Assembly (NCBI RefSeq): GCF_000150275.1
Contig: NW_002060943.1
Location: 305,077-369,076, forward strand
From: Trichoplax adhaerens
Taxonomy: Eukaryota > Animalia > Placozoa
Reading direction: 5' to 3'
DNA length: 64,000 bases
Under the pieces are notes generated by a model that worked only from the letters and a program-made list of their open reading frames with translations, was not told the DNA's origin and searched no databases. A program made the translations under genes and the position numbers. Shown in pieces: positions 49,696-56,644 of the stretch (positions are counted from its first letter, which is position 1; every line of letters begins with the position of its first letter).

Positions 49696-51028
49696 ACTTA
49701 ACCCTCCTGTATACTACAGTATGATCCTTTTCCAAACCGATAAATCAGTACACATTAATGTATACTGAACGCCGGCATTTTGGTACGAAATCCGGTCAAT
49801 TTTTGATACAGTATGTGGAATTGGTGTATATGTCATATATTGGTTCATAGTAAAGCGTTGAACTTCATATTAAAGAATTAGATACCAAAAAGATCACGCT
49901 GTACAGTTGAAGTTATTGTAAAACTAACTACTAACTCTATTCTCTCTTTCTTGTATTGAAAAATGCCGGCTTATGCTCGCCATACTTTGCATATTTTATA
50001 CGCGTAGGGAACATATGAAGGGACAGTAGAGGACATGGTGAAAAATAATTCTGTTCAATGGATTCCAGAAAAGCATGTTGGATTCATACTTTTACTCTTG
50101 TAACTACTCTAAATCAAACGTAAAATACATGCGTATAATCTTAAACCCTACCAACTACTGTTGGTATCTTTAGTCTGGCAACAATTCTCAACGAAGCAAA
50201 GTCACGTCTTATTTGCATTTGGTACATACTTTATTTAAGTCATAGTTAACTAGGATTGCGGACAACGTGCTAATATTACAGAAAGATAATACATATGTAC
50301 ATTACTATTTAATTTGCGACAACTACTGCAGAATGGACGAATTTACTGTAACACACTAAAATCCTACTTTTAGTTATACAAATACTGTACATAGATACAG
50401 CACGCGTGCATTTATACAATTATTTTTCCCATTCACTTGATTGACGATTCAATAAGGAAAAGATCTTATAGACTAGTATGGTACTTTGAAATAACACACA
50501 TATTTTTCTTTTTTGTTTGCTTGGAGCATTAATCAGCATGTGGCAGGCTAAAAGAGTAGTTCAATGGCGCAAGTCCTGTACAGTCCATTATTACTTTATC
50601 TTGTGATTACTTCTACCAGTATGTGATGTATTGTTATGTGTTTCAAAGAAACTTTATGATAATTGAACTATAAAAAATTAAAGAAGCCAATTTTTGGCCA
50701 ATTTCCTTAATTATCAGTGATATACTAATTACGAAGAACGCATTTTATTAAACAATTGCATGACAGGATCCAAACGCCTCAAGGGGCATTAATTCACTGG
50801 AGTAAGCAAATGAGATAACTTTAGGTAATTAGGTAAAAGTATTGATGAGTCTATCGGTAGTGGTTATGTATAATATAACACTATAGTTTGTAGTTATAGT
50901 ATTTATAAATTTCCTTACAGAGCTTTTACGAGCGAAGAGTTATAACTACAATCATAGCTATGAAAATTCTTATGTGTTAATGAGAACAGAGGCGAAAATT
51001 AAATCATCATGCCACAAGTTTCAGGACG

Positions 51029-51042
51029 GTTCCTATGGTAAC
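51029..51042. promoter_or_regulatory. RFX X-box GTTCCTATGGTAAC
   Basis: Exact match to GTHNYYATRRNAAC, ending 223 bp upstream of the 996-aa ORF ATG. Confidence 0.5.
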
Positions 51043-51264
51043 ATAATTAAAAGCAATATATTATAATGCATCCAAGATTTAGATGAAAACAAGTTAAAAG
51101 CTATACTTTCATGAAGGATAGAAATACATACGCAATTATCAAATATTGCCCAGCAGAGTATCGACTACATTAACTTTGGTCAGAGTCGGTAAACCCGGAT
51201 ACTACGCCTGTATTTCAGAAAAAATTATGCTCAAGAATTCCAACGATCACGTAAGCCCAAGTTA

Positions 51265-54255
51265 ATGGCGGACAGACGTCAATTACAAATAATCTTAGGT
51301 AATAAAAATGATGGACAGTACCAAAGCAAACTTCGTGCTAGAGTTTTATTGGAAATGTGGGATAAAAATCCTGAATTAAGACCAGAGGGCCACGTCTATA
51401 CTCATGGTTTTTATCCTCCCCAATTAATAGCGGATCCTGACCCAGATCAGTTACCTGAAAAATGTAAGGTGCTATTTTTATTTACAAAAAATATCTCCAA
51501 TAGTTATTCACCTCGTTTCCGGAATGAAATACTTCAACTGCCTGATATTTCTGATGAAATTGATGATTTGCCTATCAATACGGTCACTATCTTACTTGGA
51601 GCAATCACTTTGATTTCATTAATTTATTGGAATTATTATGGCCACATCAATGCATTCCGTAGCCCTAAATTGCCTATTAGTCTGCATAACGCTTGGATAG
51701 AATGCTGTAGGAAATTGCATCGAATTCCTTCCTATACAATTGACACTCTAACTATAGATAATATTCTTTTAATAAGATCTGTTGAAGAGTTTTCTCGTAA
51801 AAACATAAGGCAAAGATTTTCATTTTTTAATGCGGATGAATTCGGCTCTAGTTCCGAAACTACTTTTTTGGGATATTCATTCGCTGCTCTCAGATATGCA
51901 TGCCATGGCATTGTAGACATAGCGTTAAATCTTCAGCTGGCTATGCACAACCATGATAAAGAGGGGATTATAGCAAATCTTAACCAATTAATTGTAATGG
52001 CTGATCAAGCGTCTAATGCGCTGTCAGAAGTCAAGCTTAATCCCTATGCCGAAATAGCTATAATCCCTTCACATTGGAGCATTCTAGGCCAAGTTGGACC
52101 TATTCCACCAGAGCAGCTATTAAGTCCTAAGAGTAAGAAAACAGTCGAAGTATTAACTGAAGAGAATTTAAATTGGAATACTGCTACAGATGAAAGCTTA
52201 AATAACTTAGCGAATGAGAATAAGTTATACGGGACTACTGCTAGTGGATTATTTGATCCCATTTTTGCCACTTTTGATATAATTATTGATCGATCACATA
52301 CATCGGAACTTGGGAAAATGTTTATTAGTACACAGCGACTATTGCCTAAAGCCTATCTACAATTCTTAGAGGCGTTTAGATCAGATTTTAAGAAAACAGG
52401 TAGCCTTAGACAATACTTAGAAACTTTTGGTGATTCAGAATTAGCAAAGACTTTTAATTTACTCGAGCGCTCCTACCATAGATTTTTGAATATGCATCGT
52501 AGCAAAGCCCTAGGACTTCTATCTTTTGCAACCCAAATGGATAGAAATATGACTGTAGCTAATAGAGAGACAAAGTCTGAAAACGCTTACAAGGAAATTA
52601 GCGCTGATTTAGATGCAGGAATTAACGATCGTCAATTTATAAGCCGATTGTATCCTGCAACTATTCAATCTACTCCTGCAAATCTTAATCAACGTAAAAA
52701 TCTACAATATGTAATGTTATTTATTGGTAGTAAAACCTTTTCATATCGAGAGGGTGACAAAATCGGTGTACTAATACCAAATACTGCTACAAATTATCGC
52801 AGTATATCTCAAAATTTTACATTAAACATACATACTAAAGATCCAGTTGAAAGCCAATGGATACTATTTTTGCGTCAGTATTTTGGAATAGTGGATGGTA
52901 AGCTATCAAAAGAAATATTCATCAAATATGCTGATTTTTCGAATAGCAATATTAAAAGCTCTCCATCAGAAATTCCTCCTAAAGTACCTCGTGTATATAG
53001 CATAGCCTCATTCGATAATGACAACATTAAAATACTTGTTGAACGCATAGATAATGGGGAAGTATCACCAATACTTGCACCTCAAAATAATTTATTTAAT
53101 AAAGATCAAATTGTTAATATTTTTCCTGTTAGTTCTTCATTCCAACTTCCACAAGATACTTCAAAACCAATTGTCATGATTGGTATAGGTTCAGGGGTTG
53201 CTCCATATCAATCATTTATTGATCGTAATAAGAAAATGGATGAAGGTCGCAATATGTTTCTATATTTTGGTTGCAGGACTAAAGAGGGTGCTCCTGATAA
53301 GATCGATTACACAAAACTCTGTCTCTCTGCAGATAATAGGCAAAACTTGAAAGAATCGGAATACATCTACAATGGTCGAATTACTAGTTACTTATCATCA
53401 ACAGAAGGGCAAAATAAATTGCGTGAATTATGTTCTCAAGGTGCATTTATTTACATTTGTGGTCCAACAACTTTGTATAGAGATATGATTACAGTATTGA
53501 AATCGGCTATAGGTATAAAACAACTATTGACAATGTTGACTGATCGTATTAGAATTGAAGTATATAGACCAATATCAAATGATGGTAGACGGAAAATATC
53601 GGTATACGATGTTATCACTCATAATGGAGGATCGAATGGTTCGTGGATGGTTATTGATGACTGTGTCTACGATGTCGGCCAATATATCGATCTTCATCCA
53701 GGGGGCAATGAAATAATAGAATCGGTATTAGGAACCGATGCAACGGCGTTATTTAATCTATTTCCGACTTTACATGGAAAAATGGCACGATCAATCTTAC
53801 AGTTATACTATATTGGTGATGTTGAGAAATTAGGTAACGATTTTGAAAGGTTAGCTTATGACGTGACAAGGAAGCAAAATTCTATTGCTGCATGGTATGG
53901 TGATAATCGTGAAAAGCAATATTTTTTCGTCATGAAAAATTTGGATGCTCATGTTGCGTGTCAACATTATTTTAATGACGTGAAGAAATCCTTAGTTGGA
54001 GATGGTAGAGTTAATAAAGAATTACCCGCTTTACAGGTGATACATGAGTATAATGAATTAGTTCAAGATGAAAAATTTGTATTTCCATATTTGAGAAATA
54101 CTGCAGGCGATCTAGTGACGGAGGACGATGAATGGAAAATTATGCAAACGTTGTATGAATATAAATCGATAGTGAAACAATTAGATATTTTCTATTTAGA
54201 TAGACTAAAACGAGTGTTGGTGAAAGATCTTTGTTGCATTACAAGTGAAAACTAA
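51265..54255 (+). CDS. 996-aa fusion: IDO/PrnB-like heme domain + FNR-type FAD/NAD(P)H oxidoreductase + cytochrome b5 + C-terminal helical region
   Basis: Uninterrupted ORF. IDO-like motifs HGFYP, ASGLFDPIFATFDIII, RLLPKAYLQFL, SLRQYL, FLNMH411RSKA. FNR motifs YREGDKIGVLIPN, PRVYSIAS, FQLPQDTSKPIVMIGIGSGVAPYQSF, LYFGCR, IYICGP, EVY. b5 motifs WMVIDDCVYDV, H811PGG, GTDATALF, H837, YIGDV. AATAAA at 54419-54424. Confidence 0.9.
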   Translation: MADRRQLQIILGNKNDGQYQSKLRARVLLEMWDKNPELRPEGHVYTHGFYPPQLIADPDPDQLPEKCKVLFLFTKNISNSYSPRFRNEILQLPDISDEIDDLPINTVTILLGAITLISLIYWNYYGHINAFRSPKLPISLHNAWIECCRKLHRIPSYTIDTLTIDNILLIRSVEEFSRKNIRQRFSFFNADEFGSSSETTFLGYSFAALRYACHGIVDIALNLQLAMHNHDKEGIIANLNQLIVMADQASNALSEVKLNPYAEIAIIPSHWSILGQVGPIPPEQLLSPKSKKTVEVLTEENLNWNTATDESLNNLANENKLYGTTASGLFDPIFATFDIIIDRSHTSELGKMFISTQRLLPKAYLQFLEAFRSDFKKTGSLRQYLETFGDSELAKTFNLLERSYHRFLNMHRSKALGLLSFATQMDRNMTVANRETKSENAYKEISADLDAGINDRQFISRLYPATIQSTPANLNQRKNLQYVMLFIGSKTFSYREGDKIGVLIPNTATNYRSISQNFTLNIHTKDPVESQWILFLRQYFGIVDGKLSKEIFIKYADFSNSNIKSSPSEIPPKVPRVYSIASFDNDNIKILVERIDNGEVSPILAPQNNLFNKDQIVNIFPVSSSFQLPQDTSKPIVMIGIGSGVAPYQSFIDRNKKMDEGRNMFLYFGCRTKEGAPDKIDYTKLCLSADNRQNLKESEYIYNGRITSYLSSTEGQNKLRELCSQGAFIYICGPTTLYRDMITVLKSAIGIKQLLTMLTDRIRIEVYRPISNDGRRKISVYDVITHNGGSNGSWMVIDDCVYDVGQYIDLHPGGNEIIESVLGTDATALFNLFPTLHGKMARSILQLYYIGDVEKLGNDFERLAYDVTRKQNSIAAWYGDNREKQYFFVMKNLDAHVACQHYFNDVKKSLVGDGRVNKELPALQVIHEYNELVQDEKFVFPYLRNTAGDLVTEDDEWKIMQTLYEYKSIVKQLDIFYLDRLKRVLVKDLCCITSEN

Positions 54256-56644
54256 AGGTTTAGGTATTACTAATCTGTAAGCTACATTAGAAGTTTTGAC
54301 CTTTCTAGAATATGATAACAAATGTATTTAAAAACAGGAAAAGCTGGCAATCTCTTTAACTTGAGGGATTGTAATTGAAATATGCTTCTCCTGGTGATAT
54401 ATTGCTATATAAAACTCAAATAAAATTGTAGTAGTAACAAGTTTATAGTATTTCTTACGTACTGTAAATATTAATATTAATTAACGCTATGTTACTAAAT
54501 ACAGTATAACGTAGTTCTGTATATAAGTAGTTAATATGTTGTACTATAGCACTTATTGTACCCATTCGTAGTATTTAGCTATTAGTGCTAGTTAATACTA
54601 ACGGTAAGCCTGAATATGAGCCATAGCTTTATTACTGCGAATTAGTCTAGGAAATTATATACTCAACGGCTCGTTAAGAGAATAAAGCATACAAGCCGAT
54701 CGAAGGAGTACAGTATACGGAATCGTGTTTAATTGTGGATAGACTACATATCTACTGTATGTAAAGACCATTCCATTAATATTATGGGATAAAGTACGTA
54801 GTTTATCATTGATGTGATTTAAGGCCTGGTTTTTGCTGTGATCGTCACCATATACAGATAATGGTTATAGCTATTGCATTATAGTATTACGTTGGCTATT
54901 AAGGGAATGCTATGAATTACAAGATGTCTATTTTACTGTCTTTTAACAGTACTGTATTAGTTCACTTAATCGCTTAATTTATATGTTTAGGTATTTAACG
55001 CATGAATGTACTAAAAATAGCATTGTCCTAAAAGTATCTTTATTCAGTGGATTGTCAAAGAGAATAAATCGTCAAGAAATTTTACGCAATGCATTTGCCG
55101 TATACTGTATATTGCCAGCCAGTTACCGCTTTTAGTTGATGTTTGTTTTTGTTAACTGTTATTACTACTATTAATGTTGACTAGTTAAGAAATGCTACTA
55201 TGGAATAAGATGGATTGCTAAGAAACAATTTACAGCTTCTTCTTACTGTGTTGCTGCTAAATACTGCAATATACCGTTGCGCACAAATGGCACAACGCTA
55301 TTGACTGCATTCATGGTGGCTCCAGTAGCACATTAAGCAATCACGTTTAATTGATGCTATTGTAGTATGCTTAGCGATGCAAGTACAAGTGCATCGACAA
55401 TTAAAATTGTAAATTAGAATGCTGTAGCTGCGTGTTTGCAGAGCTCAGCTGTGCATTCAATAAGTGTACAAGACTTTACTGTGTTTCGGATTATTTTGAG
55501 ATAACTAGTAAAACAGTAGGAAATCAGGTTAATGAATAAACGTTTCTTGTAGTCAATATCTTGAAAAAAAAAAGGAAGCAGAGGCTTGTAGTATTGCGAT
55601 GATTTTCACAGAGATCTCTAAAAAAAGTAAACCTGGTAAAAGCAAGAAATTTTCTGATATCATTTGGGCAGTGTCCTGTCTCTAAGGGTCTCTAGTGTAG
55701 TAATGAGTGTAAACTTTACTGTAAAGTACAGTCCAGACTACAGATTTTGCGGTATCGTAAAAGATGTTAAATGAGCACATTATCGTAAACCGTCAGTAAA
55801 GCGACGGGAGTTTGCACTAGTATATATATGAAATATGGTATAACATTAAGAAAATATGTTCATCCATTTTGTGATCAGAATATCTATCTACTATATCTGA
55901 AAAGAATACAGTTTATATAACACTGGTTATGTGTATCGCCAGTCAGGCGACTTTTCTTTAGCAAATGTAGCCGTTATTATCCCAAAATGACTACTTAGTA
56001 TGGATCTTCCGCGTCTGTTTTCTAAATCACTGGTACTAATTTAAATAGCTTCCATGATCTTGTATAACTGTTTTTTAACCAGAATTTTGTAACAGATAAT
56101 AAGATTCAATCTCTCAATCCTTAATTGAGAAAATATTGTCAATTCAAAATCGACCGACTGCATACTAAATTTAGTTCTGCCATAACCAAGTGTTTGGCCC
56201 AATATTTTAACGAGATGAGTCTGGAAATGTCTGTCCGTCCGAGAGTGATAGTACCGTAGCATACAGTACTCTACGGCAGTGTACAGTCCTGTACTGTACT
56301 GTACACGTACAGTACAGGGTTAGGGTTAAACCTGGCCTGGTACCGTATTGTACGTACTGTAAATGTCATACAGATTCCTACAAAAATAATAACAGTGTGT
56401 AGTAAATAAACTGACGAAAATTACTCATCGACTGTTATTAACTAAGTGCAGAGAGTACTGAGCTTAAATCTTTTGGATATCGGCATTCCAGATTGCACAT
56501 ACTACTACGAGCTTATCGCTAGGTAGCTACTACCTTTCGATCTGATTCTTTCCTCAATCCTAGATACATGTACAGTGGTACACTGGCGTAGGAATATTAT
56601 ACGATGACTTTGCATAAGCACAACACTGCTCGTCAATAATTATA

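What the first reader, a model, noticed from the sequence alone, without database searches (positions are those of the whole stretch)
51265..54255. Self-sufficient IDO/PrnB-like heme enzyme fused to its own FNR reductase and cytochrome b5
Seen: one polypeptide carries an IDO-fold heme domain (aa ~45-455, putative proximal His411 at 52495), an FNR-type FAD/NAD(P)H module (aa ~465-767, ending in the FNR-like EVY) and a b5 domain with both heme-ligating histidines (His811, His837). Established: IDO-type enzymes need ferrous heme and are kept reduced by cytochrome b5 and its reductases; animal IDOs are single-domain. Inference: this is a built-in NAD(P)H -> FAD -> b5 heme -> catalytic heme chain, with b5 standing in for the FMN domain of P450-reductase-like modules. 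It may be an undescribed animal oxygenase for indole or secondary-metabolite chemistry, or for detoxification.
Basis: partly seen in the sequence, partly recalled or inferred. Interest (0 to 1): 0.92.

Follow-up and report, generated by a model that had tools for sequence, protein, structure and literature searches.

The report
Self-powered IDO-like enzyme in Trichoplax
The placozoan Trichoplax carries an intact, transcribed, intron-free gene, most likely acquired from Coxiellaceae-like bacteria, that fuses an IDO-type heme oxygenase to its own NAD(P)H-flavin reductase and cytochrome b5, an enzyme layout for which I found no biochemical study.

Summary
Window 51265-54255 (+) is a single 996-aa ORF. 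Pfam finds Cyt-b5 and an NAD-binding domain but no IDO domain. The IDO assignment still holds: an exhaustive HMMER search links the N-terminus only to proteins with Pfam IDO domains, a fusion-family profile matches standalone IDOs (hhalign 99.9%), and an AlphaFold model superposes on human IDO1/IDO2 (Z~30). His411 is invariant in 11/11 family members and aligns with the canonical proximal histidine. Both b5 histidines and the FAD/NAD(P)H motifs are present.

New findings:
- The genome is Trichoplax and holds a second intronless paralog (62% identity).
- The same four-part layout (IDO, FAD/NADPH, b5, helical tail) occurs in Coxiellaceae, Cyanobacteria, Chloroflexota and the alga Klebsormidium.
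- The placozoan pair groups with Coxiellaceae-type proteins (97/100), which argues for horizontal transfer.
- RNA-run contigs cover an unspliced ~4.4-kb transcript.
- The arginine that binds the tryptophan carboxylate in canonical IDO is absent.

The built-in electron chain and the substrate remain inferences. I found no paper describing this fusion. The scan noted this same stretch twice before (s1-762645, s1-762659), not on other DNA.

The parts
50921..55344 (+). Approximate transcribed unit (5' UTR ~250-340 nt, CDS, 3' UTR >=760 nt), unspliced
   Evidence: Contigs of four runs from four studies (one on record as RNA-Seq) cover 50921-55344. No run has contigs in 49997-50784 or in the last bin, 55513-55700 (three of the four stop at about 55,040). 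Single contigs span 51346-55018 and 51805-54313 without gaps.
51265..54255 (+). CDS, 996 aa, intronless
51331..52644 (+). IDO-fold heme domain (aa ~23-460)
52081..52200 (+). Placozoan-specific insertion of ~37-40 aa (aa ~273-312) in the loop before the distal S-G motif; low model confidence across aa 260-328
52243..52248 (+). Ser327-Gly328, equivalent of the IDO1 Ser263-Ala264 distal-pocket motif
52495..52506 (+). His411-Arg-Ser-Lys414. His411 is the candidate proximal heme ligand, invariant in 11/11 family members
52657..53565 (+). Diflavin-reductase-type FAD/NAD(P)H module without an FMN domain (aa 465-767). Motifs: YxxGDxxxVxPxN 494-506, RxYS 576-579, GxGxxP 640-647, GCRT 669-672, CG 732-733, stacking aromatic Tyr767
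53596..53823 (+). Cytochrome b5 domain (aa 778-853) with axial His811 (HPGG, 53695-53697) and His837 (53773-53775)
53827..54252 (+). C-terminal helical domain (aa 855-996), homologous to the tails of bacterial family members; no known fold match

Best explanation
The gene encodes a self-sufficient heme oxygenase of the IDO superfamily. One polypeptide carries an IDO-fold catalytic heme domain (proximal ligand His411), a CysJ/CPR-type FAD/NAD(P)H dehydrogenase module that lacks the usual FMN domain, a cytochrome b5 domain that takes the place of that FMN domain as one-electron shuttle, and a family-specific helical tail. Inferred flow: NAD(P)H gives a hydride to FAD, FAD passes single electrons to the b5 heme, and b5 reduces the catalytic heme to the ferrous, O2-binding state. 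The substrate is probably an indole or other aromatic compound rather than free L-tryptophan bound in the canonical way, because the carboxylate-binding arginine of canonical IDOs is absent across the whole fusion family. Whether one or two oxygen atoms are inserted is open. The gene family arose in bacteria. An ancestor of Trichoplax acquired it from a Coxiellaceae-like (intracellular) bacterium, its base composition drifted to match the host's, it diverged fast, it duplicated, and both copies are kept intact; the window copy is transcribed. Shown: ORF, domains, fold, conserved ligands and motifs, paralog, bacterial relatives, tree position, transcript-like RNA coverage. Inferred: cofactor binding, electron path, substrate class, donor lineage and direction of transfer.
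For: Domains and motifs. IDO homology and fold. His411 is invariant in 11/11 and aligns with the His of the canonical FRKKH motif, which aligns with the LRSYH His of human IDO2; His405 is variable. The same four-part architecture occurs in P0002, P0004, P0015 (Cylindrospermopsis), P0031 (uncultured Coxiellaceae MAG), P0032/34 (Chloroflexota), P0033 (Klebsormidium) and three more genomes of the Coxiellaceae order, with plainly bacterial gene neighbourhoods. Tree: placozoan pair + (P0002, Coxiellaceae P0031) at 97/100; AU test rejects a placozoan+Klebsormidium clade, p = 0.0008. Both Trichoplax copies are single uninterrupted ORFs, in a genome where typical genes such as TDO match exon by exon. 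The paralog lies on a 9.66-Mb scaffold and, in an independent assembly, is flanked by animal genes. ORF GC is 0.346 against flanks of 0.347 and 0.332. Strain variants: 10 synonymous to 10 nonsynonymous against 21% synonymous expected, with no stops. Transcript-like coverage. The Arg231 equivalent is absent in all fusion members under either alignment but present in standalone IDOs. From established knowledge rather than tested here: IDO needs ferrous heme and is kept reduced in cells by cytochrome b5 plus its reductase or CPR.
Against: No cofactor or activity data exist. Pfam IDO does not detect the placozoan protein directly. The placozoan stem branch is very long (~2.2 substitutions per site), so function may have shifted or decayed. 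The FAD-binding region is shortened relative to bacterial members and misses Pfam FAD_binding_1. Model confidence is low for aa 260-328, next to the active site. The AF2 alignment included bona fide IDO-domain relatives, which biases the model towards that fold. The tree has only 11 taxa, is unrooted, and several rows have deviant composition. A dioxygenase needs only one initiating electron (PMC12921851), so the purpose of a fused reductase is unclear.
Confidence: 0.65

Rival explanations
1. It is an ordinary tryptophan 2,3-dioxygenating IDO (first step of the kynurenine pathway), and the fused reductase and b5 only rescue heme that has autoxidised to the ferric state.
For: Full IDO fold, proximal His and S-G distal motif. 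The cyanobacterial member sits next to a canonical IDO and amidohydrolases. From established knowledge: b5 and its reductase are the physiological reductants of IDO1.
Against: The Trp-carboxylate-binding Arg (IDO1 Arg231) is missing in every fusion member but kept in standalone IDOs. Trichoplax already has multi-exon TDO genes for that step. The His-bearing helix has a distinct L-x-x-H-R-x-K signature, and Pfam IDO matches stop at about position 340 of 412 in all fusion members.
Confidence: 0.2
2. It is an electron-consuming enzyme, in which the fused reductase supplies electrons on every turnover: a His-ligated heme monooxygenase (like MarE or the monooxygenase side-activity of IDO), or a flavohemoglobin-like NO dioxygenase.
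For: A permanently fused NAD(P)H reductase is typical of enzymes that use electrons every cycle, such as P450 BM3, NOS and flavohemoglobin, and the reductase half resembles theirs. IDO dioxygenation needs only an initiating electron, whereas its monooxygenase route consumes reducing equivalents (PMC12921851). Loss of the Arg231 equivalent suggests a different substrate.
Against: There is no direct evidence on stoichiometry. The fusion could equally serve reactivation. This overlaps with the best explanation, which leaves mono- versus dioxygenation open.
Confidence: 0.3
3. The N-terminal domain is a decayed, heme-free relic, and the protein now works only as a flavocytochrome b5-type reductase.
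For: Pfam sees only Cyt-b5 and NAD_binding_1, and the paralog is annotated 'Cytochrome b5 isoform A'. The post-transfer branch is long. There is a ~40-aa low-confidence insertion near the pocket.
Against: The two paralogs are 57% identical over aa 1-460 with both ORFs intact, and His411, Ser327-Gly328, Asn166, Phe201 and many other N-terminal positions are invariant between placozoan and bacterial members. The fold is predicted over the full IDO length. Variants indicate purifying selection.
Confidence: 0.07
4. The gene is not a horizontal acquisition. It is either bacterial contamination of the assembly or an ancient eukaryotic gene lost almost everywhere.
For: A second eukaryote (Klebsormidium) has the architecture. 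Many bacterial relatives exist. Placozoans harbour intracellular bacteria (established knowledge).
Against: Against contamination: host-like GC with identical flanks; location inside large scaffolds; the paralog sits between animal genes in an independent assembly; only eukaryote-style sparse ORFs surround it. Against vertical descent: eukaryote monophyly is rejected (AU p = 0.0008); both copies are intronless; no other animal hit appeared in the exhaustive search.
Confidence: 0.04

Closest known systems
Indoleamine 2,3-dioxygenase 1/2 (human IDO1, IDO2; Pfam PF01231)
   Same: The same two-domain all-helical fold over the full length (Z~30). Proximal His at the equivalent helix position. Distal Ser-(Ala/Gly) motif and Phe163/Asn133 equivalents.
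   Different: About 14% identity and not detected by the Pfam model. The His helix reads L-x-x-H-R-x-K instead of R-x-x-H. The Arg231 equivalent is absent. There is a ~40-aa insertion. It is covalently fused to a reductase, a b5 domain and a helical tail, whereas, as far as I know, the characterised IDOs are single-domain and use separate reductants.
Self-sufficient heme enzymes with fused diflavin-type reductases (P450 BM3/CYP102, nitric oxide synthase) and flavohemoglobin
   Same: One polypeptide joins an O2-activating heme domain to an NAD(P)H-FAD module of the same superfamily. The presumed logic is NAD(P)H -> flavin -> one-electron carrier -> catalytic heme.
   Different: The catalytic domain has the IDO fold with a His ligand, not P450/NOS (Cys) or globin. 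The one-electron carrier is a b5 heme instead of an FMN domain. Domain order is catalytic-FAD/NAD-b5-tail.
Flavocytochrome b5 fusions (NCB5OR/CYB5R4, assimilatory nitrate reductase)
   Same: A cytochrome b5 domain and an FNR-superfamily NAD(P)H-FAD module in a single chain, with b5 as the internal shuttle (established knowledge; domains).
   Different: Those use the b5-reductase-type FAD domain (FAD_binding_6). Here, relatives carry the CysJ/CPR-type FAD_binding_1. Their partner is a CS domain or a molybdenum domain, not an IDO heme domain, and the domain order differs.
Uncharacterised bacterial and algal members of the same family (e.g. Cylindrospermopsis WP_303860205, uncultured Coxiellaceae MAG GCA_964449835.1, Chloroflexota MBI1258594.1, Klebsormidium GAQ86515.1)
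   Same: Collinear four-part architecture with 19-27% identity end to end, and shared His411, RxYS, GxGxxP, CG, HPGG and tail motifs.
   Different: The placozoan proteins lack about 60-100 residues of the FAD-binding region, carry the ~40-aa IDO-domain insert, have Glu/Gln where most members have the Arg of the Ser-Arg NADPH-2'-phosphate motif, and have a b5 loop 2 residues longer. Klebsormidium has an EF-hand pair inserted.

Membership tests
IDO family (PF01231 / heme-dependent aromatic oxygenase superfamily) | Sequence match to the curated family model | tested here: not met
   No PF01231 hit at E<=1 for the window protein. It is met only transitively: all 6 exhaustive-search hits carry PF01231, and profile-profile probability is 99.9%.
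IDO family (PF01231 / heme-dependent aromatic oxygenase superfamily) | IDO fold (small plus large helical domains) | tested here: met
   AF2 model against human IDO1/IDO2: Foldseek probability 1.0, TM 0.70-0.75; VIA Z~30, rmsd ~3 A, ~350 aligned, covering IDO1 1-400. Caveat: this is a predicted model whose alignment contained IDO-domain relatives.
IDO family (PF01231 / heme-dependent aromatic oxygenase superfamily) | Proximal histidine heme ligand (IDO1 His346) | tested here: met
   His411 is invariant in 11/11. It aligns with the canonical FRKKH His in hhalign, which aligns with the IDO2 LRSYH His. Actual ligation cannot be tested here.
IDO family (PF01231 / heme-dependent aromatic oxygenase superfamily) | Distal Gly-Ser-Ala loop over the heme (IDO1 262-264) | tested here: met
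   Ser327-Gly328 aligns with Ser263-Ala264.
IDO family (PF01231 / heme-dependent aromatic oxygenase superfamily) | Arginine binding the tryptophan carboxylate (IDO1 Arg231) | tested here: not met
   The position is Ala/Ser/Glu/His (HMMER/MAFFT alignment) or Asp/Ile (hhalign) in fusion members, and Arg in standalone IDOs.
IDO family (PF01231 / heme-dependent aromatic oxygenase superfamily) | Heme binding and O2-dependent indole-ring oxidation | not testable with these tools
   Needs expression, spectroscopy and assays.
Diflavin-reductase-type FAD/NADPH module (CysJ/CPR/MSR; FNR superfamily) | NAD(P)H-binding domain: family model, GxGxxP, and CG plus C-terminal stacking aromatic | tested here: met
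   PF00175 at 25.9 bits against a cut-off of 22. GIGSGVAP 640-647, CG 732-733, EVY 765-767. Best PDB relatives are MSR, BM3, CPR, nNOS and CysJ.
Diflavin-reductase-type FAD/NADPH module (CysJ/CPR/MSR; FNR superfamily) | FAD-binding domain: family model FAD_binding_1 and the RxYS motif | tested here: inconclusive
   RVYS 576-579 and YREGDKIGVLIPN 494-506 are present. PF00667 does not hit the window protein, although it hits most bacterial relatives. The placozoan region is shortened by deletions.
Diflavin-reductase-type FAD/NADPH module (CysJ/CPR/MSR; FNR superfamily) | FMN (flavodoxin-like) domain | tested here: not met
   No flavodoxin domain is found in any family member. A b5 domain follows the module instead.
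Cytochrome b5 (PF00173) | Family model and both axial histidines | tested here: met
   58.3 bits against a cut-off of 23.7. His811 lies in HPGG. His837 aligns with the second axial His of outer-mitochondrial-membrane b5 after a 2-residue insertion.
Bacterium-to-animal horizontal gene transfer | Nested within bacterial diversity, and not grouping with the other eukaryote | tested here: met
   97/100 with the Coxiellaceae-type clade; AU p = 0.0008 against a eukaryote clade. Only 11 taxa, unrooted.
Bacterium-to-animal horizontal gene transfer | Physically integrated in the host chromosome, host-like composition, intronless, expressed | tested here: met
Bacterium-to-animal horizontal gene transfer | Absence from other animals | tested here: inconclusive
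   No other animal hit among 1.84 billion representatives with the N-terminal query. However, distant members such as Klebsormidium were also missed by that query, and no other placozoan genera could be searched.

The most novel reading that the evidence does not exclude
This family is the IDO-fold counterpart of P450 BM3: a natural, catalytically self-sufficient, histidine-ligated heme monooxygenase that draws two electrons per turnover from NAD(P)H through FAD and an internal cytochrome b5, and that acts on indoles or other aromatics rather than tryptophan. Placozoans captured it from intracellular Coxiellaceae-like bacteria and kept two diverged copies, possibly NADH-dependent, for detoxification or for making an indole-derived signal.
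Probability: 0.3. Interest if true: 0.85.

Novelty: new variant of a known kind. Interest (0 to 1): 0.72.

Why it matters
IDO, TDO and PrnB-type enzymes are intensively studied in immunology, oncology and natural-product chemistry. Their in-vitro study is hampered by the need for artificial reductants, and for PrnB no working reductant has been found (PMC11791213). A natural single-chain version with its own NAD(P)H-FAD-b5 supply line would be a ready-made model for how the catalytic heme is reduced. It would also be a candidate biocatalyst for indole oxidation, and it would test whether His-ligated IDO-fold hemes can run electron-consuming monooxygenase cycles. For evolution, it is a clean case of a large multidomain bacterial enzyme from a lineage of intracellular bacteria becoming fixed, duplicated and expressed in one of the earliest-branching animal phyla. 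The databases label these proteins only as 'cytochrome b5' or 'sulfite reductase flavoprotein', so the catalytic domain has gone unannotated in the placozoan proteins and unnamed in the bacterial ones.

Tried and rejected
- Direct detection of the N-terminal domain failed: Pfam at E<=1 and phmmer against PDB.
- The ESM Atlas was busy on both tries.
- The word-indexed homolog search with the full-length alignment A2 was swamped by CysJ flavoproteins and missed known members.
- I first suspected His405 as the proximal ligand, because window RSYH resembles human LRSYH, and MAFFT/hmmalign put the canonical His there. I rejected this: that column is variable in the family, while His411 is invariant and is the residue aligned by the profile-profile comparison.
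- The 97-nt 'skip' at 51521-51619 in run X7 is not an intron. It has 23-nt support in one low-depth contig, and the loose end at 51641 in that run encodes the paralog's sequence, so it is a chimeric contig.
- Searching the genome with PF01231 gave nothing, but the controls were silent too, so this says little.
- A possible co-transfer with the intronless YtcJ-type amidohydrolases noted elsewhere in this genome (s1-739386) was tested. Similarity to the cyanobacterial cluster enzyme is weak (E~1e-15, C-terminal third only), and there is no linkage to the fusion in the four bacterial genomes checked (two of the Coxiellaceae order, one more from the class sample). Dropped.
- The fold search of the C-terminal tail found only generic or designed helical bundles (E>0.2).
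- Ringrose et al. 2013 (Trichoplax proteome and HGT list) is not held, so I could not check whether this gene is listed there.
Full report
WHAT IS THERE. Window 51265-54255 (+) is one uninterrupted ORF of 996 codons (ATG to TAA). In the whole 64-kb window only one other ORF reaches 150 aa, so this is an intronless gene in an otherwise ORF-poor eukaryotic sequence. Pfam recognises Cyt-b5 (aa 783-853, E 7.9e-16) and NAD_binding_1 (aa 638-740, 25.9 bits against a cut-off of 22). It recognises nothing in the first ~460 or the last ~140 residues. NCBIfam gives partial CysJ, flavohemoprotein and FNR-type hits over aa 572-758.

WHOSE GENOME. The only close database relative, P0001 ('Cytochrome b5 isoform A', Trichoplax sp. 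H2 / T. adhaerens, 1094 aa, 62% identity), is 100% identical to an ORF on another contig of the window's own assembly (G000:C1412). The genome is therefore Trichoplax, and P0001 is a paralog rather than an ortholog. That copy is also a single ORF. In an independent Trichoplax sp. H2 assembly it lies between animal genes (ribosomal protein L1, EGF/Kringle/ZP and laminin-G proteins).

THE N-TERMINAL DOMAIN IS AN IDO DOMAIN. phmmer of aa 1-460 against PDB finds nothing. An exhaustive phmmer against 1.84 billion representatives finds six proteins (E 1.5e-10 to 9e-4), and every one has a Pfam IDO domain at its N-terminus. A profile of the family hits human IDO1/IDO2 at E~1e-51. A profile made only from fusion-type proteins aligns with a profile of standalone bacterial IDOs at hhalign probability 99.9% (E 3e-36, 327 columns). 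An AlphaFold2 model of aa 1-460 (pLDDT 70, pTM 0.74) has human IDO1/IDO2 as all its top PDB matches. Foldseek gives probability 1.0 and target TM 0.70-0.75. VIA-align gives Z~30, rmsd ~3 A, ~350 of ~380 residues, with model 23-460 aligned to IDO1 1-400. PrnB does not appear among the 50 best rows listed.

WHICH HISTIDINE. RSYH405 looks like the human LRSYH346 motif, and MAFFT/hmmalign put the canonical His there. That column is variable across the family (S/G/H/N/E), whereas His411 is His in all 11 full-length members, within L-x-x-H-R-x-K. hhalign aligns His411 with the His of the FRKKH motif of standalone IDOs. That His in turn aligns with the LRSYH His of human IDO2.

OTHER POCKET RESIDUES. 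Ser327-Gly328 matches the IDO1 Ser263-Ala264 distal motif, and Asn166 and Phe201 match Asn133 and Phe163. The arginine that binds the tryptophan carboxylate in canonical IDOs (Arg231) is not conserved in any fusion member under either competing alignment, but it is present in the standalone IDOs. In all fusion members the Pfam IDO match stops near position 340 of 412, whereas the standalone IDO matches 2-411. This is therefore a distinct IDO subfamily. IDO1 residue numbers are from established knowledge of the human enzyme.

REDUCTASE AND b5. Residues 461-775 are most similar to the FAD/NADPH halves of methionine synthase reductase, P450 BM3, CPR, nNOS and CysJ. They carry YxxGDxxxVxPxN (494-506), RxYS (576-579), GxGxxP (640-647), GCRT (669-672), CG (732-733) and the stacking aromatic in EVY767. 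Bacterial members hit Pfam FAD_binding_1. The placozoan proteins have lost about 60-100 residues of that region and miss the model. No member has an FMN domain; the b5 domain follows instead. Where most members have the Ser-Arg pair that in diflavin reductases binds the NADPH 2'-phosphate, the window protein has Ser698-Glu699 and the paralog has Ser-Gln. That the placozoan enzymes may therefore prefer NADH is my inference. In the b5 domain, His811 lies in HPGG, and His837 aligns with the second axial His of outer-mitochondrial-membrane cytochrome b5 after a 2-residue insertion.

A FOURTH DOMAIN. Residues 855-996 align with the tails of bacterial members. They align best with the Coxiellaceae-type ones, through the motifs VT..QN, FLMK.L.AH, FPY.R..G and L..LK. 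The tail folds as a confident helical bundle (pLDDT 85) with no specific PDB relative.

DISTRIBUTION. The same IDO-FAD/NADPH-b5-tail architecture occurs in:
- Cylindrospermopsis and Dolichospermum (annotated 'cytochrome b5 domain-containing protein' or 'sulfite reductase flavoprotein');
- a Chloroflexota MAG, an uncultured Coxiellaceae MAG, and unnamed bacteria with bacterial gene neighbourhoods;
- at least four further genomes of the 86 in the Coxiellaceae order, three of them confirmed by Pfam, plus one further genome among the 401 sampled from the class;
- the charophyte alga Klebsormidium nitens, with an EF-hand pair inserted.
Shorter IDO-b5 versions also exist (P0003, P0005). In Cylindrospermopsis the gene heads a cluster that looks biosynthetic, with a second standalone IDO, two amidohydrolases, an ABC exporter, a sulfotransferase, PhyH, a glycosyltransferase and an upstream APS kinase.

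ORIGIN. In a maximum-likelihood tree of 11 full-length members, the two Trichoplax proteins are sisters (100/100). They group with P0002 and the Coxiellaceae protein P0031 (97/100). Klebsormidium falls elsewhere among bacteria, and a placozoan+Klebsormidium clade is rejected (AU p = 0.0008). Other evidence points the same way:
- both copies are intronless, while for example the TDO genes match exon by exon;
- no other animal hit appeared in the exhaustive search;
- GC is indistinguishable from the flanks (0.346 against 0.347 and 0.332).
Together this points to an old transfer from a Coxiellaceae-like intracellular bacterium, followed by drift of base composition to the host's, fast divergence (stem ~2.2 substitutions per site) and duplication. 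Caveats: few taxa, an unrooted tree and compositional heterogeneity. Other notes of this scan list many more intronless bacterial-type genes in this genome.

EXPRESSION AND SELECTION. Contigs of four runs from four studies, one on record as RNA-Seq, cover about 50921-55344. No run has contigs in 49997-50784 or in the last bin laid, 55513-55700. Single contigs span the ORF without gaps (51346-55018; 51805-54313). This is the pattern of an unspliced ~4.4-kb mRNA, not of genomic DNA. Because these are contigs, exact ends, strand and level are not shown.

MECHANISM. Shown: a collinear set of domains, each with its cofactor-binding signature. Inferred: NAD(P)H -> FAD -> b5 heme -> IDO-type heme. 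The inference rests on analogy with P450 BM3, NOS, flavohemoglobin and nitrate reductase, and on the established dependence of IDO on ferrous heme and on b5 plus b5 reductase or CPR in cells. Dioxygenation needs only one initiating electron, whereas the monooxygenase route of IDO consumes reducing equivalents (PMC12921851). Given that, and given the missing carboxylate-binding Arg, an electron-consuming oxidation of a substrate other than free Trp is a serious possibility. Trichoplax has ordinary TDO genes for kynurenine formation.

NOVELTY. Seven full-text searches and targeted reading found no description of an IDO-reductase-b5 fusion or of this Trichoplax gene. Subscription-journal papers are largely not covered, and domain databases probably already display the bacterial architecture. 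I rate it a new variant of a known kind: the components and the electron-transfer logic are known, while the combination is uncharacterised and its presence in an animal is unexpected.

Noticed in passing
window 49905-49938: A 34-nt stretch (AGTTGAAGTTATTGTAAAACTAACTACTAACTC...) is matched by the ends of many different contigs in all four runs, at depths up to 228, each continuing into different sequence on both sides. It looks like a repeat or a sequence shared by many transcripts.
   Followed up: no
G000:C1412:2652946-2656227 (-) = L008:2946-6227: A second intronless copy of the fusion gene (1094 aa, 62% identical to the window protein, annotated 'Cytochrome b5 isoform A'). It has a 95-aa N-terminal extension that the window copy lacks.
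   Followed up: partly
G000:C1410 ~829-832 kb, ~839.8-840.6 kb and 538.6 kb (L012-L019): Multi-exon tryptophan 2,3-dioxygenase (PF03301) matches at two or three loci, so Trichoplax has the ordinary animal route to kynurenine and possibly tandem TDO copies. No canonical IDO was detected, although that search's controls were silent.
   Followed up: no
L009:8862-23399 (Cylindrospermopsis raciborskii contig JBGBCW010000067.1): A cluster that looks biosynthetic: APS kinase, IDO-FAD/NADPH-b5 fusion, standalone IDO, unknown 369-aa protein, Amidohydro_3, ABC exporter, sulfotransferase, PhyH, GT90 and a second Amidohydro_3. It suggests an unknown sulfated tryptophan-derived metabolite.
   Followed up: no
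P0033 (Klebsormidium nitens GAQ86515.1), aa 663-719: The algal family member has an EF-hand pair inserted between the FAD- and NAD-binding parts, which hints at a Ca2+-regulated version of the same enzyme.
   Followed up: no
L011:8001-10262 (P0003) and P0005: Two-domain IDO-b5 proteins without the reductase, one of them next to an NRPS-like adenylation/thioesterase protein, an ATP-grasp enzyme, a GST and a methyltransferase. These are shorter relatives of the fusion family, apparently in secondary metabolism.
   Followed up: no
window 50921-51264: The RNA contigs start inside this region (50921, 51011, 51124) with no non-matching leader letters, so they give no sign of a trans-spliced leader on this mRNA. 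The 5' UTR contains several upstream ATGs.
   Followed up: partly
G001 (uncultured Coxiellaceae MAG), C12 and C78: The same small genome carries both the fusion gene and a separate ~380-aa standalone IDO. In the order search of 86 genomes, five matches lay in ~380-420-aa open frames, the size of standalone IDOs, which is notable for a family of intracellular bacteria.
   Followed up: partly
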